The translations under genes and the position numbers were made by a program. A stretch of DNA of 63,947 nt, counting the filler, from Octopus bimaculoides (lineage: Eukaryota): NCBI RefSeq assembly GCF_001194135.2. It is 6 parts of 6 records of this genome, joined end to end, with 100 filler letters (N's around TTAATTAATTAA, not from the genome) between each part and the next. Parts side by side here need not be neighbours in the genome. Positions count along the whole stretch, not along the records: positions 1 to 26,703 come from NC_068996.1; 5 more parts are not named here. One strand, written 5' to 3'. The stretch's first letter is position 1, and the number at the start of each line of letters is the position of its first letter. Of this stretch, positions 1,418-26,703 are shown in pieces. A model generated the notes under the pieces. It worked only from the letters and a program-made list of their open reading frames with translations. It made no database searches and was not told the DNA's origin.

Positions 1418-2644
1418 CGAGGAGTGTTCATTAAAAATTTCCCCTGACCCACTTCCCAAGGACTGGGATAAACGAAACTTGGTGTAATTATTAGTCCTTC
1501 TCTACATAATTACCACAATTGGCGACACACTTCTCATCGCTTTATGCAGTTGTGAAGACCGCGTCTGTAGAAGTCGGTAGGTTGCGTCTGGAGCCAAGGT
1601 TTTACCTCTGAAATCAGTTCATCACCATCGGAAAAGTGCTTCCCTTTCAAAAAAGACTTCATGGTGGAAATCAAATGGTGTGAGGTCGGGAGAGTAAGGG
1701 AAATGAGGAAGAATTTCATAGCCACAGCAGTATGCTTTCATCTGGGCAACATGCGCATTGTGAACTGGGGCATTGTCTTGGAGGAGGCGGACTCCTTTGG
1801 TCAGCATGCCACGCCTCTCTGTTTTGATGGCTTTTCGCAATTTCTGCAGAAGAGAAGCATAATATGCCCCATTATCACTACTCCACGCTGGTCCCAAAAG
1901 ACTGTGAGGATCACCTTGCCTGCTGAGGGTTGTACACGAGCTTTCTTTGGAGGTGGTGAGTTATCATACTTCCATTGCTTTGACTGGACTTTAGTCTCAG
2001 GACCAAAGTGATGGACCCATGTTTCATCTTCTTTGATAAGTCTGCCAAAAAAGTCCCCCTCGTTTTCTTGGCATGTTGCCAAAAGTTTCTGGGAGCAATT
2101 GACTCGTTCCTGCTTTTGAAAAGGTGTGAGCATCCGGGGAATCCATCAAACAGACAACTTCTACATGTACGAATTGTCATAAATGATTTTTTCCTATGGA
2201 TCCTACACTTATTTTCACTTCTTGGACCAGTTGCCGAATGGTTATGAGGCGATTCTCCAAAATAGCGGCTTCCACTTTATGGATGATATCATCAATGGCG
2301 GAATGTGGTCGTCCAAGAATAGGAGCGATGTCCGATCACATTGAACTGGAAATGCCCATGCTTGACTACGTCGTATGATGGTATATCGTCACCATAAACT
2401 TCTTTCATCTTATCGAAAGTCTCTTTTAGTGTACGACCTTTCAAGTATAAGAACCTGATCACTGATCTGCATTCAACTGCCTCCATTATTCCACTTCAAC
2501 AGCCATAAAAGACAAACGAATACTAGTGGAAAGTTGCAATTTACAATGTGACATGTAGAAACATATATGATTATACTAGTACAAGTTCCATTTCCTACAA
2601 TACCCGAAAGTGGGTCAAGGAAAATCTTTAATGAACACTCCTCG
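1418..2644 (-). mobile_element. Full-length degenerate mariner (DD34D) transposon, 1227 bp
   Basis: TIRs of about 37 bp (CGAGGAGTGTTCATTAAA[A/G]ATTT[C/T]CC[C/T]TGACCCAC) have 3 mismatches. TA TSDs lie at 1416-1417 and 2645-2646. Frameshifted transposase pieces are RSVIRFLYLKG, DETWVHHF, GKVILTVFWD, LLQDNAPVH and PYSPDLTPFDF. Confidence 0.95.
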
Positions 2645-2646
2645 TA

Positions 2647-4800
2647 TTATTGAACTGATAGTGTCCTGCATAGGATGTGGTCTGTTCCTAGCAGGGCTAT
2701 TTTTTGGAGAGTGTATAGTATTGAAGTTCCAGGTGTAGCTTCTACATTTTTGTTCATGTTTCTTTTCATGTTCAAAGCTCCAGTTATTACTGATATTGTT
2801 TTCACCTTCATGCCTCACATCATGAACACTTCAATTTCTAGGTCTTTGTACTTTGACAATTTCTTCACTTCTTTTTGTGGGGTAATATTTTCCTCAGAAG
2901 GGACTGCAATGTCTATCAGTAAGCAGGTGTTTTTTCCAATCCTTGATTATCATGTCTAGGCGATTAGCTTTTATTTTTCTTCTATTCCTAGATATTTGTA
3001 TGGGCGATTGTGACCTAATTCTCTAATTTCTGTGTCTATGTTAAGTGCAGTGTCTCCAGTGCTGAATAACTTGCCTCTTCTCAGTGTGACTTCGGCAAAT
3101 TTGTCCAGACCAGTGCTCATTCTGGTGCCATTGCTGAAGCTCTGGACAATTTTAATTAGATTTCTCTATTTTATGGTGCTTCTAGCGAAAAGTTTTAGGT
3201 CATCCATGTACAAGAGATGGTTTATTTTTTTGTTCATAGCACCTGTAACCCATAGTGGTTTCGTTTAACAAGTTTGTTAGCGGGTCAGGGAAAGGCAGAA
3301 AAGCAGGGATGACAGTGAGTCTCCCTAGAAAATCCCTCTTTTTATGGGTGTAGGGTAAGTTTTAATAACTTGTGAGTCATTTATTTTTAATGTTATACTG
3401 GTTTTCCAGTTTGTCATTGCATGTTTAATATATTTTAGTAATGGTGGGGATACCTTATTTGTGTGGAAAGATTCCAGTATCCATGAGTGTGGAACACTGT
3501 CGAATGCTTTCTGGTAATAAATCCAGGTCATGTTCATGTTTGTCTTTCTCCTCCTACAGCCCTCTTTAATGGCTCGGTTTACTAGAAGTTGCTCCTTACA
3601 GCCATATATCCCTCTCTGGCACCCTTTTTGTTCTAGTAAAACAGAGCTGGTTATTAGATGACTGATGCTAGGGTTTTGTAGGATGTTGTTAGGCATATTA
3701 TTGGACTGTAATTTTGTGTGTGTACGGTGTGCAGTTGGGTGTTGATTCTGGCTCACTCATCAATAAATTGAATGCTGCCGCTAACTGGTGAGGTGTTTAA
3801 AAATCAGAAGTTGGGAATTTTGTTTATCCCTGGAGTTTTTCAATTGCTGGTACTCCTCAGTTTGTTCATGATCTCTTGGCTTGTGATGGTAGGCCATATC
3901 TGTGGTTTTATTCTTCCTTTCCTTTTCCCTATTAATCCACTGGACATTATTCTTTTTTTTTTCTTTTTGGTTTGCTCCATATTGCTTCCCAGTTATAACT
4001 GAATCGCTGATGTTGTTAGCATGGCGTCTATTGATATAATTTTTCTGTTTAGCTTTCTGCAAAAAGTTTTTGTGTTTATTTTGAATCCTTTATTTTGTAG
4101 GAAGAAACGTTCCCGTTTTTCGTACCGTTTTATGCGGCAAGTTTTGCTGCTATACCCTGTTTAATTTTTTCCTTTAACTTCCGGGTATCTTCTTTATTTT
4201 TCATGTTGTATTGTTTTGTTATGTGGGCCTTTTTTTTCGTATTTGATCCTGCTTTCTCTAGTTCACAAAGTAGAGATAAGTCTTTCTTTTGTTTTTGAAT
4301 TTTATTTATTATGATCTGTTTCCATTTTGGGGTTTGAAATTTGGCTGGGATTTTTTTTATCTTGGTAAGGGTCAAGTCCAGTTTCCCCGGATATCGCTAC
4401 AGCTGTTGAGAAGATCAAGTCATTTAGTTTGTTGATATCGAGTGTATCTTTTGATATTGTCATTATTACCTGTGAGGCTCTGTTGAATCTCCTGTCTGCT
4501 GAATCTCCTTTATTTTTTCTGTAGCCTGGAGCCACGTTTACACTGGTCCATATTTATCGACTGTCTGATGTTTAGGTCTTCTAATTTTGTTATTTCTTCA
4601 GTCGGTTCGTCTCCGACCTCCGTTTTAGCTGCTCACTTATGGTGTGTGTTATTTTGTTTGTTGTTGTTAGGCGCTTCAGTATTTTCCTATCTATATGTGT
4701 TGATTGCTGTACTGTTCTATTATTTCTGGGTATAAATTTTACATTTATTTACCGTGTGCAGTGTTATATCTGTTGTGTTATTATTCTCACTATAGACGTC
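2647..4800 (-). mobile_element. R4/Dong element (C): N-terminus, RT and RLE, with an internal deletion of thumb and zinc knuckle
   Basis: Motifs include INKLNDLIFSTAVAI, EQKGCQRG...KAFDSVPHSWI, IKRGIF*GDSLS and HLLYMDDLKLF. YKYLGIEE is joined directly to ANRLDMIIK, followed by SKYKDLEIEV and the end LLGTDHILCRTLSVQ*. Confidence 0.85.
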
Positions 4801-4829
4801 GCACAGTATACAATATCGTGAGATATTGT

Positions 4830-7800
4830 GTCTACCGGAGGTTTGTACTGTTTGTCAAGTCACAACAAGGAACTTAGACAGACAGTACTTTACGCAATAT
4901 GCGTGCAGGTCCAACCAGTGCCAACTTTTACAATACACCTAGATTGTAGGGTATTTCTAAAGTTTTCAGATGTTTTTTTTTCAGATTGGGTAGTATTGAA
5001 CCCAATGTTCTGATGACAATAGGGATAACCTTTATGTTTGAGTCTCATAGCTGCCACATCTTAGCAATCTCAATTCTCAGGTCTCCATATTTATCAGTTT
5101 TCTCTCTTTCTTTCATGATGATATGTTGATCTCCTGGTACTGCCACGTCAATTATTAGGCACTCTTGTTTGTCCCTCCCCCATTTCCCGATGGGTGCACT
5201 ATAGCGGACTACAGCAACAGCCCATATGTTAATGACAGTCACAAGGTTCCTTGAGTTGAGTTTAGATTTCAAGAGAAGTTTGAGGCGCTTAAAATATGCA
5301 GTGATGACCTTGTCTTTCATTTCTCTATGCAAGATATTGTCCAGCTCCAGGGTCCCAAGGTACTTGTACTCATCATCATCCGGGTCTTCCATTCCCTCTC
5401 CGTTTGGCAATTCTATGCCCCTACAATTTATTCTTTTCCCCGCTTCAAAGAAAGCACCGCACACTTCGAGATACCGAATTCCATCCCTATATCCTTACTG
5501 CACATTTGCACATTCTCAACCAGCCTCTCCATTTCAGGCTCTGTTTTTACAAAAAGTTTTAAATCATCCATGAATAGAATGTGGTTGAGACGAGGTCCGT
5601 TCATTCTCAGCTCATAGTGCACGTTGATTTTACGTAGGGCTACAAAAGTGGGATCAATGCTATAACAAATAGCAGGGGTGAACAAGAGTCTCCTTGGAAG
5701 ATACCTCTTTTGACTGTTACCTCGGCTGAGTGCTGGTTGTTACAAGAAAGATGTGTTTTCCAACTAGGCATGCTGTTCTTAATCAGTACACACACGTTCT
5801 CAACTATTCTACACATGTCAAGTGTTTCCAAAATCCACGAATGCGGCAACATGTCGTAAGCCTTTTTGAAGTCTATCCAGGCCATGCATAAATTTTTTTG
5901 GTACCGTTTATAGTTCTTCATTATACCCGTCTCTATCACAAAGTGGTCCTTGGTGCCTTTGTATCCTTTTCGACATCCCTTTTGTTCTACTGGCAGAAGA
6001 TTGTTTTCAGCAAGCAACGTATATATTTTCCCTGCGAGGATGCCTGTTAATACTTTCCATAGGAGGTTAAGACAAGCAATGGGTCGGTAATTGCCAACCT
6101 CATTGCCCTTTGACCGATTTTTCATTAACAATGTTGTTCTTCTCTCTACTATCCACTCCGGAACTACACCACTCTGTAGGCAATTGTCTAATTACGACGC
6201 AATTCTCTTGTGTATTGACTTAAACCACTTGAGCCAGTAGCCTTGAATTCCGTCTGGTCCTGCCGCTTTCCAGTTCTGGGCAATGAGAACTTACGTTGTT
6301 ATGCGCACATGGTCCTGTCGTGGAAGCTCCAGGTGATGGAGTTCGAAACTCACGGAATGAATCCACTCAGCACCCAGATGTTATTCCAAAATTGGCGGGT
6401 TTCTTCTGCTTCAGGGGGTGTATTATCTTCTGTATTTCCTCTTAAGTCCTTAAGAAACTGCCTCTGGTTTGCTGGAACTGCGATATGCGATCAGTGTAAC
6501 GTTGCATCATTAATGTTTTAGCCCGTACACGTTGTTTTAGGGTTTCGATGACAGTTTGAAAGCCTTTCTTCTCTATTTGGCACCTCGCGTCAAGATATGC
6601 CCTTGCACTTTCGTTTCCATTTTTCCATTGCCCTTTTGACCATTCTTCTATGTGGCTCAGATCTTTACGCGAAGTTAGAATATCGCCTTCATTTCTCAGT
6701 TTCCACCATGTCTCCTTCCGTCTGTCTACTTTCCTCTCTTTCTTTCCAACCAGTTCGCCTACTAACATTGAAGTGGATCTGATCAAGTCTCTTGTTTCTG
6801 TTATTTGTCAGAATGTGTTTCAGAATCTCATCAACTTTTTGGGTCGCGCGTTTCACATTGTTACGGTTGAAGCTTCTTAGATTCACCAGCTTGGTCTCTG
6901 CTCTTGTAATTCTTATGTCCTCGAGTCTTTTCCTGAAGTTTCTTTGTTCCTCAGTCATATCCTCTCTTAATTCAGGGTTTTGTTCATTATATTGATTGGT
7001 CGGCCTTTCCTCCACTACAACTTCACCTTGCCTACGCATTCACTGATCTTCACCTATGTTATTCTCGAGATTTTCACCACTACAGAGGCTTTTCCTGATT
7101 GTCTGAATCTGGGCCTTTTGGTTCATATCAACAGACCACTTGCGTTTTCGAGCACGTTGCATAATTTGACCAGTACAAGGACTGTCTTCTAGTATGGCTA
7201 GCAGTTGTTAGATTACGACCGGGCCCACCTTGCTGCACAGTGGGGGCTCTGCCAGGTGCGGCACCTTCACCATTGGTTCTAGTTCCGTTTACACCGTTAT
7301 CGTCATTTATTTTGCTTGGCATTTTCACTCACAAATGAGGTGTGTTTTTAGGTTTCTACAAACCGGTATTTTTGTCGAGACACCATTTCTATCAAGGTAG
7401 TCCGCCAAGGCGGCAGGGTCCTTGCTCCTCTGGTTTTGGGCTTGGAGTGTTCCTTCTCCTAGGCTGCCTACCACCCAAGGCTAACGAGTACAGCCTATTC
7501 GGAGCACCGGTTATTTGGAGGCGCCAGATACTCGCCTGTTCCCAAACTTCTGTTGGTTTCGCGAAGGAGTCGGGCTTGCCCACTGTAAGTCCTATCTACA
7601 CCAGACTTGAAATCAGAGCATTCCTTCTCCTAGACAGACTGCCAACCAAGGATCACGAGTTTTGTCTACCCGTTTTCAGAATGGCCATTGACTCTTTTAA
7701 GTTCCTCTGCCCTTTGCCTGGTTTTGTTTTTAATCCTGCAGGGTGTCGAAAATCCACCTTCCTCACCAAGTAAGCTTAGTGGGGTTGCCGGTTTAATCGC

Positions 7801-7850
7801 CGACGTCTCAACGGTTCGACAACGCCACTTGTTAATCAGTCTGAGTAATT
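4830..7850 (-). mobile_element. R4/Dong element (D): GC-richer 5' leader, N-terminus, RT, RLE and 3'UTR, with an internal deletion
   Basis: ORFs 7128..7328, 6689..7039 and 6442..6786 (N-terminus), 5640..6131 (NYRPIACL, EQKGCRKG, DFKKAYD, RGIFQGDS), 5428..5685 (LFMDDLKLF) and 5045..5464 (YKYLG...IIDVAVPGD...KYGDLRIEI). The C-terminus is PARILRKVLSV*. Confidence 0.9.
7441..7672 (-). ncRNA. Candidate structured RNA motif, two tandem copies in the Dong-D 5' leader
   Basis: Copy 1 stem is UAGGCUG/CAGCCUA (7460-7497) and copy 2 stem is UAGACA/UGUCUA (7631-7668), giving two compensatory double substitutions. CUCGU, CCUUGG and AGGAGAAGGAA are conserved in both copies. Confidence 0.5.
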
Positions 7851-8074
7851 CTTGTTCACTATTATAGTTTCACTATTGCTACTATAATCTTTATCTTATT
7901 ATTTCTTAGTTCACGACTATAATTTCACCGAGGGGCCCTAATATTGTCTCTCTTGATTTCTTTAGACAACAAATGATGGCAGATTCACGATTGTTGGTTT
8001 AGCTGCTGCTGATGCTGCGGTGTTAGTTCTTAATTACTGGTTATTCTTTACTTGAAATTACCAAAGGTTTCAAG

Positions 8075-8449
8075 TAGTACCTTCTCCTGTGACTCAAAGA
8101 GACAATAGTCTCCTTAGAATGCGAGCTGTACCCGAAAATGCTGTCTTCTGGATCACTTCGAGCCTGACAGTAGCTCCAATATTCTTAATATGTTTTTCAA
8201 GGCCCTTGCAAACTGCTCCTAATGCTCCAATTACCACCGGTATCACCATTACTTTCCTCATACCCCATAACTTTCCTATCTCACCCCGCAGTGGCTGGTA
8301 TTTCTCAATCTTTTCTGTTTCCTTACATTTCACCCTCGAATCGCCTGGTATTGCAACATATACTATCTTACTTCTTTTTCATTTTCATGGATGATCACAA
8401 TATCTAACCGTCTCGCCTCTATCACTAACAATATGGCTTATACTGTCTC

Positions 8450-8450
<1 letters not shown>
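8075..8450 (-). mobile_element. R4/Dong 3' fragment (E; same subfamily as 29265-31985)
   Basis: ORF 8094..8333 reads EKIEKYQPLRGEIGKLWGMRKVMVIPVVIGALG...GTARILRRLLSL. An (ATT)n tract flanks it at 8451-8496. Confidence 0.85.
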
Positions 8451-8496
<46 letters not shown>

Positions 8497-8558
8497 NNNN
8501 NNNNNNNNNNNNNNNNNNNNNNNNNNNNNNNNNNNNNNNNNNNNNNNNNNNNNNNNNN

Positions 8559-9064
8559 GGTATAAACACACGCCAGAAAAGGTCACAGAAAACGAGAAAG
8601 CAACCATACTCTGGGATATGCCAATACACACAGATAGAGAAATTAAGGCAAATAGACCAGATATCGTTGTCAAAGATCATGAAGAAAAAAATGCTTTCTA
8701 ATTGATGTATCAATACCAGCAGATGACAATGTTTCTCTAAAAGAAACGGAGTAACTCTCAAAATTCAAAAACCTGAAAATAGAGGTAACTCGAATGTGGA
8801 ATCTAAAAACAGAAACAATTCCTATCATAGTAGGTGCCTTAGGTATAATAAAAAAATATTCAGACAAATACATAACAAAAACACCAGGACTTACAAATAT
8901 ATATAACATACAGAAAATTGCACTACTGGGCACTGCACACATCCTACGCAAAGCACTTTCAATACAGTAATCATAGGAGCATCACAGCAAACCACAGCAC
9001 ATACCCAAGGCACACAGAGCTGCGCTCGGTAGTGAAGTGAAAGCACTAAAAATAAGACTACTAA
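8559..9064 (+). mobile_element. R4/Dong young family Y, 3' end (RLE and 3'UTR)
   Basis: It reads TILWDMPIHTDREIKANRPDIVVKD...LIDVSIP...MWNLKTETIPIIVGALG...ALLGTAHILRKALSIQ*. The 3'UTR cacagcaaaccacagcacatacccaaggc...gtgaagtgaaagcac is shared with the other Y copies. Confidence 0.9.
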
Positions 9065-9119
9065 AGGAGGAGAAGAAGAAGAAGGAGGAGGAGAAGGAGG
9101 AGGAGAAGGAGGAGGAGGA

Positions 9120-9179
<60 letters not shown>

Positions 9180-9183
9180 GAAG

Positions 9184-9215
<32 letters not shown>

Positions 9216-10544: not shown

Positions 10545-12190
10545 TATTCTATTATTTTCTTCCTTTTAGCCATGCGGTCATGCTGGAGCACCACCGTAAT
10601 TTTTTCACTTTTATATATGATTCTTCTTTGGCTGATAATTTTTTCAGGGTGATTGGGGTCACATCACCACTCCTGTATGTGCTTTTGCCCTTGTTGGGCC
10701 ATTTGATGTATGAGGGAGTTTGACACAGCTGCTCTCATGTCATGCTCTCATGTCATGCTCTCATGTCATGCTCTCATGTCATGCTCTCATGTACTTCATG
10801 TCAAACCATTGGTTCATCCGGCATTGTGAAGAGGAGGATGTCTAGTTCCTTTTTGAAGACATCTACTTCCACCTTATGCAAATTTCTTAATTTTTGTGGC
10901 AGGGCATTGAAGAGCTGTGGGCCTTTGGACCCTAGACTATTGCAATATCTAGTCCTGAATTTCGTTGGAATGGATGGTACCTTTGGTACAATACAATGGT
11001 GTCCAGTTCTGGCATTTGTATAACACTCAATGCCAAAGTTAAGTACTAGCCTTTCTAGGATTTTCCATACGTATATTATTGCATATCTCTCATGCCTTCA
11101 CTCCAGGGAGTAAAGCTGTAGTTTTCTCAGCCTATCCCTGTAGCTCATCCACTGCACTGTTTTAGTGTAGTGGTGCTGGACCACTTCAATCTCTGCTGTT
11201 GGTTTGTCACTATGTGGTGACCATAGCTCAGTCCAGGCGGCTGAGAACAAAGGTCCTCTACAGAGTCAACATAACTTTTCTTGGTCTCTTGTTTTGAAGG
11301 ACCTCAGTATCCATCCTGCCAGTTGCCCGCACCTTGCTGCCATCTTGGTAATGTGCATTTGAAATGATACATCATTGTACATACTGATCCCCAAGTCTCT
11401 CACTGCCTAAAACTCTGGAATTGTAGTGCTTTCGGGTCCTGTATATGCAGGCTGTGGTGCATTTGTGAGCTTGAAATTTTCCAGCATTAACCTGCATGCT
11501 GTTTACTTCAGTCCACTTGTATATCGCATTCAGCATTCTATATTACCAGTGATAATTTTATATCCTCGACGTAACTAGTGACAGTGGCTAAGTGAGTGAC
11601 CATGGACATGTATAAGAGGACTATTATAAACTGCAATGACTTCAAGACAGTTCCCTAGTGGACGCCCCTTAGAATTTGGGCTTTCTGAAAGAGAACACCA
11701 CTGGCTGCAACTGCCTCACTTCTGTCTTTAAGGAAGTCATGCAACAACTCATAGTTTAACAGCTATGCCAAGGTCTCGCGGCTTGCGACATATCATGTCA
11801 TGATCTACCTTATCAACAGACCTTTGCAAAGTCAAGCTATATCACACTGACATGCGAATGGTGAAATAACTGTTTCAAAACCCAGTCATAGTGCTGTAGG
11901 AGCTGTGTGAGGCAGCTTCTTCTTGGACAAAAGCTATGCTGTGTATTATTCCATAAGCCATTTTTTTCTAGGAACATTATAAATTTCTTTTTGATGATTC
12001 ATTCCATGACTTTACTGATATGTGAAGTCATAGAGTTCGGTCTGTAGTTTTCAGCCTCTACTCTGCTTCAGTCTTTGTGAATAGGGTATAGAATGCCTCC
12101 TTTTAGCTTTTAGGAAGTTTACCACTTGCAAGGAAACTCTGGAAAAGTATCTGAAGTGGTTTCTCTAAAGCCTACGTACGCGACTTCAGG
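10545..12190 (-). mobile_element. CR1-clade LINE, degenerate RT and 3' end
   Basis: The minus strand has a DKVDHD motif (AFDKVDH-like) near 11800, a degenerate GVPQG region near 11660, and C-terminal GPQLFNALPQKLRNLHKVEVDVFKKELD...PDEP. The 3' tail is ggtggtgctccagcatgaccgc. Confidence 0.8.
10731..10792. repeat. 13-bp tandem repeat (GCTCTCATGTCAT) x about 4.8
   Basis: Units start at 10731, 10744, 10757, 10770 and 10783. Confidence 0.95.
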
Positions 12191-12209
12191 AGAATAGCTC
12201 AGAAGCCAT

Positions 12210-12565
12210 TATCACACAAGTACCTGGTTTCAATGGCTGCTGCGCATGACTGTGCCTTTGAACTGGTTGATCAGCTTCCATATTCCCCTGATTTAGTCCA
12301 TTCTGGCTATCATCTGTTCCCCGACACGAAAAAAAAAAAACTTGGCTGGGAAGCAGTATTGCAGTGATAATGATGCCTTATCCATTGTTGATGACTTTTT
12401 TGAGTAACAGGATGAAAGCTTCTTCACCAAAGGGACGCAAGCACTGCAACACCGATGGAAAAAGTGTGTGAACTACAAGGGGGACTATGTTGAAAAATAA
12501 ACGTCATTTGGTGACATTCCATGAAAGTATCTTAGTCACCTTGTGTACTTTCCAGCCAACCCTCA
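12210..12565 (+). mobile_element. mariner 3' fragment with right TIR
   Basis: It reads FELVDQLPYSPDLVHSGYHLFP...LQHRWKKCVNYKGDYVEK*. It ends tactttccagccaaccctca followed by TA. Confidence 0.85.
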
Positions 12566-13543
12566 TATATATATATATANNNNNNNNNNNNNNNNNNNNN
12601 NNNNNNNNNNNNNNNNNNNNNNNNNNNNNNNNNNNNNNNNNNNNNNNNNNNNNNNNNNNNNNNNNNNNNNNNNNNNNNNNNNNNNNNNNNNNNNNNNNNN
12701 NNNNNNNNNNNNNNNNNNNNNNNNNNNNNNNNNNNNNNNNNNNNNNNNNNNNNNNNNNNNNNNNNNNNNNNNNNNNNNNNNNNNNNNNNNNNNNNNNNNN
12801 NNNNNNNNNNNNNNNNNNNNNNNNNNNNNNNNNNNNNNNNNNNNNNNNNNNNNNNNNNNNNNNNNNNNNNNNNNNNNNNNNNNNNNNNNNNNNNNNNNNN
12901 NNNNNNNNNNNNNNNNNNNNNNNNNNNNNNNNNNNNNNNNNNNNNNNNNNNNNNNNNNNNNNNNNNNNNNNNNNNNNNNNNNNNNNNNNNNNNNNNNNNN
13001 NNNNNNNNNNNNNNNNNNNNNNNNNNNNNNNNNNNNNNNNNNNNNNNNNNNNNNNNNNNNNNNNNNNNNNNNNNNNNNNNNNNNNNNNNNNNNNNNNNNN
13101 NNNNNNNNNNNNNNNNNNNNNNNNNNNNNNNNNNNNNNNNNNNNNNNNNNNNNNNNNNNNNNNNNNNNNNNNNNNNNNNNNNNNNNNNNNNNNNNNNNNN
13201 NNNNNNNNNNNNNNNNNNNNNNNNNNNNNNNNNNNNNNNNNNNNNNNNNNNNNNNNNNNNNNNNNNNNNNNNNNNNNNNNNNNNNNNNNNNNNNNNNNNN
13301 NNNNNNNNNNNNNNNNNNNNNNNNNNNNNNNNNNNNNNNNNNNNNNNNNNNNNNNNNNNNNNNNNNNNNNNNNNNNNNNNNNNNNNNNNNNNNNNNNNNN
13401 NNNNNNNNNNNNNNNNNNNNNNNNNNNNNNNNNNNNNNNNNNNNNNNNNNNNNNNNNNNNNNNNNNNNNNNNNNNNNNNNNNNNNNNNNNNNNNNNNNNN
13501 NNNNNNNNNNNNNNNNNNNNNNNNNNNNNNNNNNNNNNNNNNN

Positions 13544-13574
<31 letters not shown>

Positions 13575-13619
13575 GTGTATGTATCTATATATGTATATGT
13601 ATGTATGTATATATATATA

Positions 13620-15215
13620 GCCCTCCTCCGCTTGCTCCGCCGTTGGGGTCCTGATGTTGGTGTTTACTCGTGTTTAGTCTGGGACCTCATTCTCGACCTT
13701 GCCGCCATGAGTGGTCCCACCAGGAGTCTAAGACTCCAGACAGTATCGCCCCCAGAATCATTGGAACACACAAGCTCTTCCACCACAACAAAGGACGATC
13801 ATCGGAAGAGAGGGACGACCATCTCAAGCCCCCAAGGATTGACTCCGGCGGAAGAGGGCAACGTCTGGTGGGCAGGCGTGACAAAGGCGGATAGACTCCA
13901 GCAACTCGCTGCAACTAGCTTCAAGACTGCACATCTCAAGTCTTGAGCCGCGGTGGAGAAGTTCCTGGCCAAGTGCGTACGCGTGGCTGTCGCACAGCAC
14001 GATCACCTCAAACAATTTAATCAGTGAATGGCTTCGTCTTTCTTATCTGACTCAAAAATCCCAATGTCGATGTTATCGTGGGCACCAGAGAAAGGTCTGA
14101 AAAGCTGGAAGCCTCTAGTCCGTGACCACACATTCGCGGTGAATCTCAGATGGTTTCTCTCCAATGAATAGCCGTGACATTGAAGTTCGGCAGCTAGACT
14201 CGTGTCTGGGCTGGCCTCTTTAGGACTACCGCAGCCCACCCTTCAAGAGGAAGCCCCTAGAAAAGGTGGGGTAAACATCGGACACGGCAACTCGATCCGG
14301 CTAGCATGTCGCTGCTGGTAGTCCTACTACTTAGCAGTCGGAACTCTACTAAATTCTCTGTTTCACAACCTCTCACCTTCGGGGAATGGAACATCCGCAC
14401 TCTCCAGGACAAGAGTGACATTAATCGACCAGAGCGACGTCTGCAAGGAACGTTCCCGCTTCAACATCGACGTGGCAGCCTTGAGCGAGACTAAGCTTCC
14501 CAGCGAAGGCAGCATCAAAGATCTGGCTCCAAATACACCATCTTTTGGAAGGGAAAGAATCCTAATGAACCACGCACCCATGGAGTTGGCCTTGCCAACA
14601 AAACGCAAATCGTGAGCCAACATAGACTCGTCCCAACTACTGTCAGTCAGCGCCTGATGACTGTTCGGATCCCATTTATTCGGGACAGATTTCTTACGCT
14701 AATNNNNNNNNNNNNNNNNNNNNNNNNNNNNNNNNNNNNNNNNNNNNNNNNNNNNNNNNCGCATGACAAACCCGTCGTGTTGGGGCACTTTAACGGCAGA
14801 GTTGGCAGTGACCATTGTCTGTGGAATGACATTCTTGACCATCACGGCGTTGGTTAATGCGATGCCAATGGCCAGCTCCTCCTAGGCTTTTGCGCCAAGC
14901 ACGAACTCGTCATCACCAACACCCCATTTCGTCTCCCTACACGACAAAAAAATAAAACAAAAAAAAAACAACCTGGAAACACCCACGGTCTAAACACTGG
15001 CACATCCTCGACTACGTTCTGACAAGATCCAGGGACAGACGAGAATGTACGCATCACCCGCTCCATGCCTGGGGCAGATGACTGCTGGACGGATCACAGC
15101 CTTCTTATTTCTCCCCTTGACATCAAGATCCGCAGCCTACCAAAACGGGTCTCAGCAAACATTCCTTGCCGACGCTTCGACTGCGCCAAGCACCGGAACT
15201 CACCGGCATCTTAAG
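13620..15215 (+). mobile_element. RTE-clade LINE, 5' part (5'UTR and APE endonuclease); RT absent
   Basis: APE motifs are WNIRTLQD...RPERR, SRFNIDVAALSET, VVLGHFNGRVG, ELVITNTPF, HPRSKHWHILDYVL and DCWTDHSL. It starts immediately after a (TA)n tract. Confidence 0.85.
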
Positions 15216-20589: not shown

Positions 20590-21381
20590 TAATGCCGAGT
20601 ATTTGATAAATAGTGATGAAAACCTGCTGCAATACGCCGCGAAATATATGGGTGTAAATGCAGATGAAATGATGGGCAAGGAAGAGTTTAGCCAAAGAGG
20701 TGAGGAGAAGAGAAAAGATCTTGAAATGAGAATGCATGGACAGTTTGAGCGGAATACAGAAGACGTTAAGGTTAATACAGCATCGTGGGCATGGCTGGAG
20801 CGAGGTGAATTGAAGCGTACCACTGAGAGCCTGATCATTGCTGCATAAGACCAGGCTCTCGCTACCAATTCAGTGAAGTATAATATCTATACAACTTCTG
20901 ACACCCAGAAATGAAGACTCTGTTGGAAAGAGTGTGGAAAATGTGATCCACTTGGTAAGTGGATGTGGGAGCCTTGCACAAAAAGAATACAAGTGCCGCC
21001 ATGATAAAGTGTGCGTGTGTATCTTCGTTGGCTCTTATGTCGTAAATACCAAAATGAAGTAACAGAGAACTGGCATGAGCATGGACCAAATAAAGATATG
21101 CAGGAGGATGGAAAAGTAACGATACTCTTGGACTATGATTTTCAGACGGATCCTGTAATCGAACACCGTCGGCCGGATATTGTCATATTGAATAAGAGAG
21201 ACAAATACTGTCAGATCAGTGATGCAGCCACACCAAATGACATGAATGTTGTGAGTAAAGAGGTTGAAAAAAAATCACGAAGTACTCAGAATAGAAAGTG
21301 GAAATGGTAAGACTGCATGGAATGCGAGAGAGTAGTGTAAAAGTGATACCAGTGGTGATCGGAGCATTGGGCTTAATCCCA
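20590..21381 (+). mobile_element. R4/Dong element (H): thumb, knuckle and RLE (same subfamily as N)
   Basis: It reads WAWLERGELKRTTESLIIAA, LAQKEYKCRHDKV, QTDPVIEHRRPDIV and VKVIPVVIGALG. Confidence 0.85.
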
Positions 21382-21795
21382 NNNNNNNNNNNNNNNNNNN
21401 NNNNNNNNNNNNNNNNNNNNNNNNNNNNNNNNNNNNNNNNNNNNNNNNNNNNNNNNNNNNNNNNNNNNNNNNNNNNNNNNNNNNNNNNNNNNNNNNNNNN
21501 NNNNNNNNNNNNNNNNNNNNNNNNNNNNNNNNNNNNNNNNNNNNNNNNNNNNNNNNNNNNNNNNNNNNNNNNNNNNNNNNNNNNNNNNNNNNNNNNNNNN
21601 NNNNNNNNNNNNNNNNNNNNNNNNNNNNNNNNNNNNNNNNNNNNNNNNNNNNNNNNNNNNNNNNNNNNNNNNNNNNNNNNNNNNNNNNNNNNNNNNNNNN
21701 NNNNNNNNNNNNNNNNNNNNNNNNNNNNNNNNNNNNNNNNNNNNNNNNNNNNNNNNNNNNNNNNNNNNNNNNNNNNNNNNNNNNNNNNNNNNNNN

Positions 21796-22116
21796 AAAAA
21801 CTTTCAAAATACAAAGCCCTGGAAATAGAGATAACTCGAATGTGGAATCTAAAAACAGAAACAATTCCTATCATAGCAGGTGCCTTAGGTATAATAAAAA
21901 AATATTCAGACAAATACATAACAAAAACACCAGGACTTACAAATATATATAACATACAGAAAATAGCACTACTGGGCACTGCACACATCCTACGCAAAAC
22001 ACTTTCAATACAGTAAACATAAGAGCACCACAGCAAACCACAGCACATACCCAAGGCACACAGAGCTGCGCTCGGGAGTGAAGTGAAAGCACGTTATAAA
22101 AATAAAACTACTGAAC
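21796..22116 (+). mobile_element. R4/Dong young family Y, 3' end, followed by (AAT)n
   Basis: It is near-identical to 8760-9060. The 3'UTR ends actactgaac, followed by (AAT)n at 22117-22137. Confidence 0.9.
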
Positions 22117-24384: not shown

Positions 24385-25870
24385 CTTTCGGTGTTTCAAC
24401 AGTGGCTCCGCGGCATTTTTTTCATATACCACCTTAGGCTGTTTTCCTCTGCTTTGATACAGTCCTGGAAACTGATAAAACCTCTCCCACCCTTTCTTCT
24501 GGATAAGTACAGCCTATCGGTGTCACTCCTAGGGTGGAAGGATCCGTGTACTGTTAACATTTTTCTGGTTTTGGTATCCATTTTCTTCATTTCTCTCAAC
24601 ACCAACCTCAGTCTTCGGAAATACTCCATCCTCAGTTGCTCTTTCATTTCCTTTTCCATTATCTTGTTGAACTCTAGTACACCAGGGTATTTGTATCCGT
24701 CTGTTTCAATTTGTTTAATCAAGTCTCTATTCGGTAATTCTATTCCTGCTAGGAACTGCACCTTGCCTCTATTTTGGTAGATATTCCACACTTCTTGAGT
24801 CCAAATTCCATTTTAATATCAGTACTAAAATGATGGACCGTGTTCACTGAGGAACTCACTTGTATCTCATCTTTGCCATAAAGTTTCAAATCATTCATGA
24901 AGAGGAAATGGTTGATTATTTGGGATTTTCCCTTTCGTTGGTACCCCAGGTACATTTTCTAGAGTGCCAAGGTCAGGGTATCATGCAGAGAACAAAAAGC
25001 AACGGAGATAGGCTGTCACCCTGGAAAATTCTTTTTCTGATACATACCCACGGTGCCCAAGCCTTTTCCGTAAGATGTCAGTTTAATTTTCCATCCCACC
25101 ATATTTTCCTTCAGGAAATACGTTACATTCCTCGGAATTCCAAACAACTCTAAGCACTCGATGATCCACGAATGTGGAATCATCATAAGCTTTGCGATAA
25201 TAAATCCAGGCCATTCCTAAGTTCGTTCTCCTTCGTTTACAATCTTGAATTACCATTTAGTCTACCAATAGTTGATCTTTGATACGTCTGCATCTCCTTC
25301 TACAACCTTTTGGTTCCAATGGTAATATATCGTTCTCATCAAGAAATTTATACAGTTCTTCTGCAATTCCTCCTGACAGTAACTTCCATATTAACGGGAA
25401 GCAGGATATTGGTCTGTAATTGTCAGCAGCATTTCCCTTTGATGCATCCTTCAGACACCACATTGTTCGTCCTTTTGTCAGCCTGCCCGGGATTTCATTT
25501 TCTCGATTGATTAATGCTTTAAATTGTTCTGCGATCAATTTATGGCAACTGCTCAACTTTTTTAATCCAAAATCCCTGCACACCATCAGGTCCTGTTGCT
25601 TTCCAATTGCTTATCTGTTTACTCATATTTCTGATACTGTCTTCTGTGAAGTGGTTAAAAAGCTGGGGATAAGAAGCTGCAGTATTATGTTGTTCTTGCT
25701 TATTCCATATTTTATTCCCAAAACAGTCGACTTTCATCAGCATCAGGGACTAATCTTTCACGTCTTTTATCGTCATTAATCTCTTGATAAAATCTTTTTG
25801 GGTCGGTTTTAAACAATTCATTTTACTGGTATTGCTTAATCCTAGTTTGTTCAAATCTAGTTAGCTTTGC
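24385..25870 (-). mobile_element. R4/Dong element (K): pre-RT region, RT and thumb
   Basis: It reads [41 protein letters not shown] and HPRSDTDRLYLSRRKGGRG. Confidence 0.85.
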
Positions 25871-25899
25871 CTTTTCTGAATGTATGCGCTGCTTCAGTT

Positions 25900-26703
25900 C
25901 TTCAGACTGGAATAGACTGGACCAAAAACGAAATAAAGAAACTTAACAGAAAAACTAGGAAGTTGATGACGACGTATTAAGCCCACTATCCGAAAGCTGA
26001 TATCAACCGGCTGTACTTGGGGAGAGACTAGGGGTGGAAGAGACTTAACAACAGTAAAAGAATATGTACAGATGGAAAGTAAAAGTCTAGTAGAGTATTT
26101 ACAGAACAGCACAGACAAACTAATAAAGACAATAAAAAGCAGATGATGAAGCGCGTAAGAGGAGAAAAGGACAAGAATGAAATACAAAGAGAGCACGGCA
26201 GACAGATTGAAGAGAAACCTCTGCATGGCTAATTTTTGAAAGCCACTGAAGACGTATGTGGGACAAAATCCTGGGCTAGTTTAAAAAAAGGGGCAATTAA
26301 AAAAAGAAAAAGAAACAAAGAGCCTAATTGTAGTAGCCCAAGATCAAGCGATAAAAACAAACAACTTGAGAAAAAGTATATATGGAGAGAATGTGTCAGA
26401 AAAATGTAGAGACTGTAGAACTTGGAACAAGATAGTGGAACACATTGTAGCAGAATGCCACGAGTTGGCACAGGAAGAATATAAGAAATGAAGGCATGAC
26501 CAGGTTCTAAAAGTTTTGCACTGGAAACTGTGCCAGAAATGGGGATTTGAAGCTGGAAACACCTGGGACAATCATCGAGTCGAAAGAGTTCTGGAGTCAG
26601 AGAAATGTAAGATTTTGTGCGACTTTTAAATTCAAACGGACAATAAGTTAGAAAATAATAGACCAGGCATAACAATCATAGATAAAGAAAATTGAAGTTA
26701 CTT
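25900..26703 (+). mobile_element. R4/Dong element (K2): thumb, knuckle and RLE start
   Basis: The plus strand reads IDWTKNEIKKLNRKTRKLM, KADINRLYL, HIVAECHELAQEEYKK and LHWKLCQKWG. It is head-to-head with K. Confidence 0.75.

What the first reader, a model, noticed from the sequence alone, without database searches (positions are those of the whole stretch)
7381..7680. Tandem covarying RNA structure in the 5' leader of a Dong element: candidate ribozyme or translation-control module
Seen in sequence, on the element sense (minus) strand about 110-350 nt upstream of the ORF start: two copies of [stem]-CUCGU-x-CCUUGG-x-[stem']-GGAG-AAGGAANN-CUCY. The outer stem covaries (UAGGCUG/CAGCCUA vs UAGACA/UGUCUA; G-C to A-U and U-A to A-U). 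A second hairpin, GGAG/CUCC or GGAG/CUCU, is kept in both copies. The invariant CCUU in loop 1 is complementary to the invariant AAGG in loop 2, suggesting a pseudoknot or kissing interaction. A third GCCUUGG hairpin lies at about 7393-7404. Established: several non-LTR clades carry 5' self-cleaving ribozymes (HDV-like in R2, R4 and RTE; twister in a schistosome RTE). From memory, a similar motif lies in RTE 5'UTRs; this is unverified. I could not fit it to canonical HDV or twister folds. It may be an undescribed motif, possibly exchanged between RTE and RLE clades, since Dong-N in this window has no such leader.
Basis: partly seen in the sequence, partly recalled or inferred. Interest (0 to 1): 0.75.

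Follow-up and report, generated by a model that had tools for sequence, protein, structure and literature searches.

The report
Conserved stem-loop array in Dong leader
The repeated motif is a real, conserved folded-RNA module in the 5' leader of a lineage of Dong (R4-clade) jumping genes; it is not itself the self-cleaving ribozyme, which in the closest relatives is a separate HDV-like domain upstream of it, and its own job is still untested.

Summary
On the minus strand, two diverged copies (7668-7615 and 7497-7444) each carry a 6-7 bp hairpin with a near-invariant loop (CUCGUnAnCCUUGGnUGG). A 4-bp hairpin, GGAG-AAGGAAnn-CUCY, follows directly. Each copy is followed by a degenerate third hairpin of the same type.

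A covariance model built from the two copies found the same module in other Dong-like elements. It always lies on the sense strand, between the (TAA)n insertion site and the start codon. One carrier is Penaeus indicus; the rest are ENA assemblies and marine metagenome contigs. Across 13 instances, 96.7% of pair cells pair, against 42-47% in slid controls, and 11 of 14 pairs show compensatory changes.

It is absent from about 70 other Dong-like loci and matches no Rfam family.

The ribozyme reading is not supported. In the closest leaders (L020, L091) an HDV-like candidate meeting the structural criteria of my own descriptor starts at the first base after (TAA)n and ends about 50 nt before the module. 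HDV-like 5' ribozymes in Dong and R4 are already published. The window's copy is decayed and has no recognisable ribozyme core.

Most likely the module is a docking platform on the processed, presumably uncapped RNA, for translation initiation or for the element's own protein. This is inferred, not shown.

The parts
4785..7884 (-). Decayed Dong/R4-type non-LTR retrotransposon copy. It has frameshifts and an internal deletion between the RT and the endonuclease remnant. The 5' and 3' limits are inferred from degenerate TAA tracts.
   Evidence: Three-frame translation. Pfam RVT_1 on 6191-5643, E 1e-15. Homologs are single-ORF RT plus zinc-knuckle plus PD-(D/E)xK proteins. The 3' end reads ..GAGAATAATAAC.
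7885..7905 (-). Degenerate TAA-repeat remnant (AAATAATAAGATAAAGATTAT), taken as the insertion site and 5' junction.
   Evidence: Relatives start directly after (TAA)n.
7323..7884 (-). 5' leader (about 560 nt) of the element.
   Evidence: ATG at 7322-7320. The N-terminal peptide GRAPTVQQGGPGR is homologous to the N-termini of P0009 and L013.
7631..7668 (-). hp1-A. Outer stem TAGACA/TGTCTA; 5' internal loop AAACTCGTGA; inner CC/GG; apical TTGGTT.
   Evidence: Model R2 hit 7613-7673, 62.6 bits.
7615..7630 (-). hp2'-A: GGAG-AAGGAATG-CTCT (G.U closing pair).
7565..7593 (-). Degenerate hp1-type hairpin A2: AGGA...TCCT with inner GGGC-AA-GCCC (7581-7572).
   Evidence: read from the sequence.
7500..7558 (-). 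Linker AACCAACAGAAG..GGCGAGTATCTGGCGCC..TGCTCCG. It is homologous to L020 3501-3558, which is the J4/2 and P2-3' edge of that element's HDV-like candidate plus the spacer after it.
   Evidence: Local alignment score 54 against a shuffle maximum of 42.
7460..7497 (-). hp1-B. Outer stem TAGGCTG/CAGCCTA; inner GCC/GGT; apical TTGGGT.
   Evidence: Model R2 hit 7442-7502, 59 bits.
7444..7459 (-). hp2'-B: GGAG-AAGGAACA-CTCC.
7393..7424 (-). Degenerate hp1-type hairpin B2: CAAGG...CCTTG with inner CCGCC-TT-GGCGG (7413-7402). It aligns with the second hp1 unit of L020.
   Evidence: Weak R2 hit 7375-7429, 12.9 bits, E 2.9.
7366..7389 (-). hp2 GAAA-TGGTG-TCTC (one mismatch in this copy) plus GACAAAAATAC. 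This is the most widely conserved leader element.
   Evidence: The same motif is in 12 leaders, including Clytia hemisphaerica L092 and L007, which lack hp1. GAGA/UCUC against GUGA/UCAC is compensatory.
7351..7364 (-). hp4: GGTTT-GTAG-AAACC.
   Evidence: Relatives at the same position read GGUG..CACC, UAGGG..CCCUA and AGUU..AACU.
7328..7339 (-). Start-proximal hairpin CTCA-TTTG-TGAG, 5 nt before the ATG.
   Evidence: CCTCATTT(A/G)TGAGTGAAAATG is shared with L059 and L006.
8094..8451 (-). Context only: a 5'-truncated second Dong-like copy (endonuclease C-terminus) directly after (TAA)15 at 8452-8496. Its 3'UTR runs 8093 to about 7906.

Best explanation
SHOWN. The finding is two copies of a conserved structured RNA module, here called hp1 plus hp2. 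It belongs to the sense-strand 5' leader of one lineage of Dong/R4-clade retrotransposons that insert into (TAA)n.
- hp1 has a 6-7 bp outer helix whose sequence drifts freely.
- Inside it are a 9-10 nt 5' internal loop with invariant CUC, a 3-bp inner helix (GYC/GRC), a 6-nt apical loop UUGRNN and a 2-4 nt 3' bulge beginning with A.
- A 4-bp hairpin follows directly.
- Leaders carry one to four such units. They are followed by the hp2 hairpin GAGA-UGGUG-UCUC, an A-rich run, one or two more hairpins and the AUG.

SHOWN for the closest relatives L020 and L091. The module sits about 50 nt downstream of a separate candidate that meets the structural HDV-like criteria and starts at the first base after (TAA)n.

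INFERRED. The element is transcribed as part of a longer RNA. The 5' ribozyme cuts it free, which should leave a 5'-OH and no cap. The hp1/hp2 array then serves as a docking platform on that RNA. The most likely partner is the translation machinery, giving internal, cap-independent initiation at the nearby AUG.

The window's own copy is a dead element and has no recognisable ribozyme core. The A/B duplication was probably inherited from an active master copy, because the two copies keep their helices through compensatory changes.
For: - Model R1, built only from window copies A and B, hit leaders of distant relatives on the sense strand upstream of the ORF: L002 (E 7e-5), and L020, L013, L059, L012, L023, L006.
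- Model R2 added Penaeus indicus L086, plus L087, L088, L089 and L091 with two units.
- Covariation on a MAFFT alignment of 9 instances: 95.2% of cells paired against 41-46% slid, 11/14 pairs with both-side changes, 0/500 shuffles.
- Covariation on 13 instances: 96.7% against 42-47%.
- Outer stems include UAGGGGG/CCCCCUA, UAGGAGG/CCUCCUA, UAAGGGG/CCCCUUA, GGGUGG/CUACCC, GAAGGA/UCCUUC, AUGUAG/CUACAU and UAGGAGA/UCUCCUA.
- G.U pairs on the sense strand point to RNA read in that direction.
- The N-terminal proteins of carriers are only 34-40% identical, while the hp1 loop is nearly invariant.
- HDV-like candidate upstream in L091: P1 GGCUCU/GGAGCU with a G.U pair at +1, P2 CUCUC/GAGAG, P3 ACC/GGU, L3 UGCACGU, 2-bp P1.1, J4/2 CCAA. 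Only 1/500 shuffles put a candidate at the 5' end. L020 shows the same core under looser descriptors.
- Dong and R4 5' ends self-cleave in vitro (PMC3774820).
- Upstream AUGs are not depleted in 10 related leaders: 2-10 per leader, close to expectation. hp2 itself holds a conserved AUG. This fits non-scanning initiation.
Against: - No functional data exist for any copy.
- The 13 instances come from 11 loci that are related to each other, so covariation counts are not independent events.
- Only one host is named. If all carriers are crustaceans, the conservation is less striking.
- Strongly conserved loop sequence with drifting stems fits a sequence-specific protein site at least as well as ribosome recruitment.
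- The upstream-AUG argument is weak. The window's own leader has 3 against 9.6 expected.
- In L013-type leaders I could not place the ribozyme with my descriptor, so 'downstream of the ribozyme' is demonstrated only for L020 and L091.
Confidence: 0.4

Rival explanations
1. The array is a 5' regulatory RNA bound by the element's own protein. This would be the Dong counterpart of the R2 5' RNA, which binds the R2 protein and licenses second-strand cleavage, or it would ensure that the protein acts on its own RNA.
For: - Near-invariant loop with covarying stems and a variable copy number (1-4) is typical of protein-binding hairpins.
- R2, also a restriction-like-endonuclease LINE, needs specific binding of the 5' and 3' regions of its RNA (PMC4117753).
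- The R2 5' RNA is a multi-stem structure that grips the protein (bioRxiv 10.1101/2023.04.07.536001).
- In 'family X' leaders the repeated hairpins resemble the element's own 3'UTR end.
- GGAGAAGG also opens the 3'UTRs of L013, L059 and the upstream truncated copy in the window.
Against: - The RNA is far more conserved than the N-terminal half of the protein (34-40% identity). A co-evolving pair would be expected to drift together.
- The window element's own 3'UTR lacks the GGAGAAGG motif.
- No sequence or fold similarity to the R2 5' RNA was tested or seen.
Confidence: 0.3
2. The module is part of the 5' ribozyme, or a folding helper for it. It could act as a peripheral or P4-like domain, or as an insulator that keeps downstream sequence from misfolding the catalytic core.
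For: - Peripheral domains can speed HDV-like ribozymes by up to about three orders of magnitude (PMC4908430).
- Downstream sequence was needed for cleavage of silkmoth R2 (PMC3774820).
- In L013-type leaders the arms of hp1 (G-rich and C-rich) could alternatively cross-pair with the arms of the 5' stem-loop (L002 candidate).
- hp1 resembles that 5' stem-loop in layout: an outer helix, a 5' loop, an inner helix and a UUGG-containing loop.
Against: - In L020 and L091 the candidate core is complete without hp1 and ends about 50 nt before it.
- L012 (G-C to U-A) and L059 (G-C to A-U) changes keep the hp1 hairpin but break the cross-pairing.
- GAGA to GUGA is compensated inside hp2, not by the 5' GAGAC.
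- Copy number varies from 1 to 4.
Confidence: 0.12
3. Each hp1 unit is itself a self-cleaving ribozyme of an undescribed or strongly deviant HDV-like kind.
For: - A strongly conserved unpaired core sits inside covarying helices.
- The layout loosely recalls P1/P3/L3: an outer 7-bp helix, a 3-bp inner helix, a 6-nt loop and a small hairpin directly after.
- A conserved CAA lies downstream in the window/L020 subfamily.
Against: - No Rfam ribozyme match, even at E<=10.
- No strict HDV-like candidate in window 7700-7320.
- No conserved P2 partner, no P1.1, and no catalytic-C position shared by all instances.
- The units are internal. Cleavage at an internal unit would remove the upstream leader from the RNA that is copied back, yet that leader sequence is inherited.
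Confidence: 0.05
4. The repeats are DNA-level promoter monomers, like the tandem 5' monomers of mouse L1, or simply a neutral duplication in a dead copy.
For: - Two direct copies lie 171 bp apart in a 5'UTR.
- Non-LTR elements often carry internal promoters and repeated 5' monomers (own knowledge).
- The window copy is decayed.
Against: - Compensatory changes that keep hairpins, sense-strand G.U pairs and freely drifting stem sequence are not expected of transcription-factor sites.
- The module is single-copy in most relatives.
- The duplication is also present, with different spacing, in L020 and L091.
- A 5' ribozyme implies co-transcription from upstream rather than a precise internal start.
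Confidence: 0.06

Closest known systems
HDV-like self-cleaving ribozymes at the 5' ends of R2, R4, Dong, RTE, Baggins and L1Tc (PMC3774820; Ruminski et al. 2011, cited there)
   Same: - Same host element type and the same part of the element, the 5' leader.
- Close relatives of this leader (L020, L091, and L004 of another lineage) carry HDV-like candidates exactly at the (TAA)n junction.
   Different: - The hp1/hp2 module is a different, downstream structure.
- It is not at the 5' terminus and has no nested double pseudoknot, no P1.1 and no assignable catalytic C.
- It occurs in 1-4 copies.
R2 5' regulatory ('5' PBM') RNA (PMC4117753; bioRxiv 10.1101/2023.04.07.536001)
   Same: Both are multi-stem-loop sense-strand RNAs near the 5' end of a restriction-like-endonuclease LINE and are distinct from the 5' ribozyme. 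This RNA is a plausible functional analogue.
   Different: - No sequence or structural homology was shown.
hp1/hp2 lie wholly in the UTR, and no pseudoknot is supported.
- Protein binding is untested.
Tandem 5'UTR monomers of mouse L1 (own knowledge)
   Same: Tandem direct repeats in the 5'UTR of a LINE, with variable copy number.
   Different: L1 monomers act as DNA promoters. Here the constraint is on RNA base-pairing.
Viral and cellular internal ribosome entry structures (general knowledge)
   Same: - A structured leader with several unused AUGs ahead of the true start.
- The RNA is expected to lack a cap after ribozyme cleavage.
   Different: No homology to any described IRES. No Rfam hit. 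Activity is untested.

Membership tests
HDV-like ribozyme (applied to the hp1/hp2' motif of the finding) | Nested double pseudoknot: P1 and P2 cross, P3 closes L3, and the P3 3' strand abuts the P1 3' strand (PMC4908430). | tested here: not met
   - There is an outer helix and a 3-bp inner helix, but a 2-4 nt bulge separates them.
- No conserved P2 partner exists. The loop CUC / downstream GAG pairing is broken in L059 and L012, where the change is compensated inside hp2 instead.
- The strict descriptor finds nothing in window 7700-7320.
HDV-like ribozyme (applied to the hp1/hp2' motif of the finding) | [quoted passage not shown] | tested here: not met
   hp1 units start 60-390 nt inside the leaders, never at the (TAA)n junction.
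HDV-like ribozyme (applied to the hp1/hp2' motif of the finding) | Catalytic core: L3 with conserved U..C..G, 1-2 bp P1.1, and a catalytic C in J4/2. | tested here: not met
   - The apical loop is UUGRNN, with no C to form P1.1.
- hp2/hp2' abuts hp1 with no joining nucleotides.
- No C position after hp2 is shared by all 13 instances.
HDV-like ribozyme (applied to the hp1/hp2' motif of the finding) | Self-cleavage in vitro. | not testable with these tools
   Needs co-transcriptional cleavage assays.
HDV-like ribozyme (applied to the 5' termini of L091, L020 and L004) | All the structural features above, with P1 starting at the element's first base. | tested here: met
   - L091, under the strict descriptor: P1 1031 GGCUCU/GGAGCU, P2 CUCUC/GAGAG, P3 ACC/GGU, L3 UGCACGU, 2-bp P1.1, J4/2 CCAA. 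1/500 shuffles.
- L020 shows the same core under looser descriptors that accept any C in J4/2.
- L004, also under the looser descriptors: P1 GGCGGAA/UUCCGCC, P2 8 bp, L3 UUCCUGU, 0/300 shuffles.
- L020 and L004 fail the stricter J4/2 rule used.
- Activity was not tested.
Any described RNA family (Rfam 15) | A covariance-model match at or near the gathering score. | tested here: not met
   - No gathering-level hit in the window.
- Only chance-level hits at E<=10 in 7200-8000: ST7-OT3_4 at 20 bits against 80, on the other strand.
- None in six related loci.
Dong/R4-clade non-LTR retrotransposon (the host element) | A single ORF with an RT followed by a zinc knuckle and a C-terminal restriction-like (PD..(D/E)xK) endonuclease, and no N-terminal AP endonuclease. 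| tested here: met
   - RVT_1 on 6191-5643.
- Remnant ..CLIIDVAVPGD..EKTDKY.. at about 5150-5050.
- Full-length homologs P0039, P0081 and P0110 carry CxxC..H..C and RPD..D..E.K, and zf-RVT.
- The middle part is deleted in the window copy.
Dong/R4-clade non-LTR retrotransposon (the host element) | Insertion into (TAA)n repeats, as for Bombyx Dong. | tested here: met
   - Relatives abut long (TAA)n at both ends.
- The window has degenerate TAA tracts at 7885-7905 and about 4785, and the neighbouring copy follows (TAA)15.
R2-type 5' protein-binding RNA | Specific binding by the element's protein and control of second-strand cleavage. | not testable with these tools
   Only the positional and architectural analogy could be assessed.
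L1-type promoter monomers | Tandem 5' DNA repeats whose constraint is on DNA sequence and not on RNA pairing. | tested here: not met
   Stems drift while pairing is kept: 11/14 pairs are compensatory, and G.U pairs occur on the sense strand only.

The most novel reading that the evidence does not exclude
The hp1/hp2 array is a compact, modular entry platform. It lets a ribozyme-processed retrotransposon RNA, which should have a 5'-OH and no cap, recruit ribosomes, or ribosomes together with the element's protein. It is conserved across elements whose N-terminal proteins have diverged to 35% identity. That would make it a new class of structured translation or RNP element that works together with HDV-like ribozymes in animal genomes. 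The still more radical reading, that hp1 is a new self-cleaving motif, is not excluded, but I put it at about 0.05.
Probability: 0.35. Interest if true: 0.65.

Novelty: new variant of a known kind. Interest (0 to 1): 0.45.

Why it matters
HDV-like ribozymes explain how R2, R4 and Dong RNAs get their 5' ends. They should leave an RNA with no cap. How that RNA is then translated, and how it is handed to its own protein, is known in part only for R2.

This module is conserved, supported by covariation and variable in copy number. It lies directly between the ribozyme and the start codon, which makes it a concrete, testable candidate for that missing step in the R4/Dong clade. It is also a ready-made covariance model for annotating Dong leaders in crustacean and other marine animal genomes.

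It does not add a new ribozyme class on present evidence.

Tried and rejected
- **Rfam.** No family matched at the gathering threshold. Relaxed scans of 7200-8000 and of six related loci gave only chance-level hits: ST7-OT3_4 on the plus strand, MicF, ZFAT-AS1_3 and CrcZ over TAA repeats.
- **Stability.** Folding energies of the copies and of the whole leader are no better than shuffles. Stability gives no support, but short helices with large loops would not show up this way.
- **More copies in the window.** There are none.
- **Window ORFs in the protein collection.** Exact look-up found none.
- **hp1 as an HDV-like core.** I tried the outer stem as P1, GCC/GGC as P3 and hp2' as P4. This fails on P2, P1.1 and J4/2.
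- **hp1 as P4 of an L013-type ribozyme.** With P2 = GAGAC / GUCUC of hp2, J4/2 would lack a C, and L059 and L012 break the pairing.
- **Cross-pairing of hp1 arms with the 5' stem-loop arms**. L012 and L059 favour the hairpin.
- **RNAalifold on the L013-type leader.** It gave a G.U-rich alternative with almost no covariation.
- **Coding explanation.** The upstream AUG at CAUGGGUAG opens reading frames of different length and frame in different elements and is absent in the window and L020. The 143-aa antisense ORF 7342-7773 has no Pfam hit and is not in the collection.
- **Leader hairpins mimicking the element's own 3'UTR.** This is suggestive in some lineages but not for the window element's own 3'UTR.
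- **Ribozyme core in the window.** The L020 core has no significant match in the window leader: score 23 against a shuffle mean of 25.5.
- **Papers not held.** Ruminski 2011, Christensen 2006 and Kierzek 2009 could not be read.
Full report
**1. What is in the window**

On the minus strand there is a decayed non-LTR retrotransposon.
- The RT domain lies at 6191-5643 (Pfam RVT_1, E 1e-15).
- A remnant of a PD-(D/E)xK endonuclease lies near 5100.
- The copy has several frameshifts and an internal deletion.
- Its best protein relatives are about 45% identical overall and 62-65% identical in the RT. They are single-ORF proteins with an RT, a zinc knuckle and a restriction-like endonuclease, from sea urchins, shrimps, corals, jellyfish and many unnamed ENA assemblies.
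- The ORF starts at the ATG 7322-7320. Its N-terminal peptide (..GRAPTVQQGGPGR..) matches the N-termini of the relatives.

Upstream on the same strand lie (TAA)15 and a 5'-truncated second copy that ends at 8094. Its 3'UTR follows, then a degenerate TAA tract at 7905-7885. The leader of the element in question is therefore about 7884-7323.

**2. The observation**

Both core patterns occur only here and are far above chance: expected 0.07 and 0.01 times, observed twice each.

Aligning the copies confirms two compensatory double changes in the outer stem. It also shows that the similarity extends to a third hairpin with two more compensatory changes: GGGC-AA-GCCC against CCGCC-UU-GGCGG. That third hairpin sits inside a larger stem (AGGA/UCCU in copy A, CAAGG/CCUUG in copy B). 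It aligns with a true second unit in a relative, so each 171-nt repeat holds two hp1-type stem-loops.

Folding energy is not unusual, and no Rfam family matches.

**3. Is it conserved elsewhere?**

A covariance model built only from copies A and B (R1) hit the leader of L002. That element's protein is 41% identical to the window's, and the hit lies directly upstream of its ORF and about 60 nt after its (TAA)n junction.

A scan of metagenome contigs returned 80 Dong-like loci. R1 found the motif in six of them, always on the sense strand and in a 5' leader.

A second model built from nine instances (R2) recovered all of these. Using relatives fetched through their N-terminal proteins, it added:
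- Penaeus indicus (L086);
- three more ENA loci (L087-L089);
- L091, with two units.

About 70 other Dong-like loci, including Clytia hemisphaerica L092, lack the motif. It therefore marks one lineage.

**4. Structure**

On a plain MAFFT alignment of nine instances, the three helices pair in 95.2% of cells, against 41-46% when the partners are slid. 11 of 14 pairs show changes on both sides, and 0 of 500 shuffles reach the observed values.

On 13 instances aligned to the model, the figure is 96.7% against 42-47%.

The features of the module:
- The outer helix changes sequence freely.
- The inner 3-bp helix shows GCC/GGC, GUC/GAC and ACC/GGU.
- The adjoining hairpin shows GAGA/UCUC, GUGA/UCAC, GGAG/CUCC, GGAG/CUCU and AGAG/CUCU.
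- The unpaired positions CUC, A, CUUG and A-bulge are nearly invariant.
- G.U pairs occur on the sense strand, so the constraint is on the sense RNA.

Caveats: the instances are related to each other, and the second alignment was fitted to the model.

The N-terminal proteins of the carriers are only 34-40% identical. The leader module is therefore much better conserved than the adjoining coding sequence.

**5. Relation to the ribozyme**

Eickbush et al. 2013 (PMC3774820) showed that Bombyx Dong and Ascaris R4 carry HDV-like ribozymes at their 5' ends. Dong RNA cuts itself exactly after the TAA repeats. A ribozyme in a Dong leader is therefore known.

I wrote a descriptor for the HDV-like fold, using the features given in PMC4908430, and checked that it finds the human CPEB3 ribozyme. 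Results:
- **L091**, whose leader with L020 is the closest to the window's. The strict version finds P1 GGCUCU/GGAGCU starting at the first base after (TAA)n with a G.U pair at +1. It also finds a 102-nt J1/2, P2 CUCUC/GAGAG, P3 ACC/GGU, L3 UGCACGU (CPEB3 has UUCACGU), a 2-bp P1.1 and J4/2 CCAA. Only 1 of 500 shuffles gives a candidate at that position.
- **L020** has the same core under looser descriptors that accept any C in J4/2.
- **L004**, of another lineage, has an equally good candidate at its junction under those looser descriptors (0/300 shuffles).

In L091 the candidate ribozyme ends at about 1180, and the hp1 units lie at 1230-1355. The module is therefore a separate, downstream structure.

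No strict candidate exists in window 7700-7320. hp1 itself fails the defining features of the fold (see the membership test).

**6. The window copy**

Only L020 3501-3558 aligns significantly with the window, at 7558-7500. That stretch is the 3' edge of L020's candidate ribozyme plus the spacer after it. The ribozyme core itself has no match in the window.

The window's first 200 leader bases resemble none of the relatives. The copy is dead, and its 5' domain is lost or rearranged.

The duplication of hp1 plus hp2' is shared with L020 and L091, at a spacing of about 70 nt instead of 171. Copies A and B keep their helices through compensatory changes. This points to a duplication in an active ancestor rather than decay after insertion.

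**7. Wider leader architecture**

After the hp1 units comes hp2, GAGA-UGGUG-UCUC, followed by an A-run ending in YAC. This is found in 12 leaders, including Clytia and L007, which lack hp1.

A covarying hairpin (hp4) follows. A start-proximal hairpin then lies 4-8 nt before the AUG.

Upstream AUGs are as frequent as chance predicts in the 10 related leaders, 2-10 per leader. One sits conserved inside hp2.

**8. Mechanism**

*Shown:* a conserved, modular, sense-strand RNA structure lies between the 5' processing domain and the start codon.

*Inferred:* after ribozyme cleavage the RNA should lack a cap, and the array acts as a docking platform.

I rank the readings as follows.
- **Translation initiation (0.4).** The arguments are the position of the array, the A-rich unpaired linkers, the tolerated upstream AUGs, and an RNA conserved far beyond the element's own protein. 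The last point suggests a conserved host partner.
- **Binding by the element's protein (0.3).** R2 needs specific binding of its 5' RNA (PMC4117753). The R2 5' RNA is a multi-stem structure that grips the protein and activates second-strand cleavage (bioRxiv 10.1101/2023.04.07.536001). Conserved loops on drifting stems fit a protein site well.
- **Ribozyme accessory domain (0.12).**
- **DNA promoter monomers or a neutral duplication (0.06).**
- **A new ribozyme (0.05).**

It also cannot explain why CCUU is kept where AAGG is absent.

**9. Unresolved**

The L013/L002-type 5' domain begins GCUCCC, like Bombyx Dong. It has a pseudoknot-like topology: GAGAC/GUCUC, matched by CCAGUG/CACUGG in another leader family and CCAG/CUGG in Clytia. 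I could not fit a canonical catalytic core to it.

Six leaders carry a further conserved 125 nt between (TAA)n and this domain.

**10. Verdict**

The ribozyme interpretation is not supported, and the ribozyme that does exist in this element family is already known. The module itself appears undescribed, and its function is open.

Noticed in passing
L051 84-167: A tRNA-Gly-like sequence sits in the 5' leader of a Dong-like element right after its target repeat (ARAGORN; Rfam tRNA 30.3 bits against a gathering score of 29). L010 and L036 leaders have T-arm-like GGTTCRAWYCC but no tRNA call. This could be an alternative 5'-processing module (RNase P/Z) in place of a ribozyme.
   Followed up: partly
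L009, L011, L014, L016-L019, L025, L028, L029 leaders: A different leader family. After a 5' pseudoknot-like domain (GCGCCAGUG...CGCUUCACUGG) come 1-5 tandem hairpins CUA-AGGG-AGAAAA-CCCU-GACAGAAAA. These resemble the elements' own 3'UTR ends (..CAGCUGAAGAGCUGAGAAAAAUCAA) and loosely resemble the window's GGAG-AAGGAAnn-CUCY.
   Followed up: partly
L012 395-520, L013 3377-3492, L059 112-227, L087 1721-1838, L088 1215-1332, L089 1202-1324: A highly conserved extension of about 125 nt (GUCCUGGGYAUGAC...CACCCUUGAGCAAGGUG...) lies between (TAA)n and the GCUC(U)CCCC domain. If that domain cleaved at its own 5' end, the extension could not be inherited. Its role is unknown.
   Followed up: partly
L092 (Clytia hemisphaerica) 1465-1503; L053; L020 3806-3834; L091; L002 3978-4003; L089: A start-proximal hairpin with a constant GGCAGU loop lies 4-8 nt before the AUG. 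Its stems covary: CCUU/AAGG, UUCUU/AAGAA and AGUU/AACU.
   Followed up: partly
L001 1-10175: A head-to-tail array of Dong-like copies with a period of about 3340 nt, separated by A-runs and TAA repeats. These copies start inside the ORF and have no structured leader.
   Followed up: no
window 8452-8557 and 8094-8451 (minus strand): (TAA)15 lies next to an assembly gap of Ns. A 5'-truncated second Dong-like copy follows. Its 3'UTR opens with GGAGAAGGUAC...CCUUUGG, similar to the 3'UTRs of L013 and L059 and to the hp2' hairpin.
   Followed up: partly
window 3328-3756 (-), about 24400-26675, about 2000-2500 (-), 9060-9200: Further RT fragments of other LINE copies, a mariner-type transposase N-terminus, and long TAA / GGA-type microsatellites. 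The window is a nest of transposable elements and simple repeats.
   Followed up: no
window 12000-14000 and 21000-22000: Two very AT-rich stretches (GC 0.22-0.24) carry long mechanical ORFs (12487-13946). They were not examined.
   Followed up: no
window 7416-7494 (+): A weak Rfam hit to the sequence-only lncRNA model ST7-OT3_4 (20.4 bits against a gathering score of 80, E 0.018) on the antisense of copy B. I judge it to be chance.
   Followed up: yes
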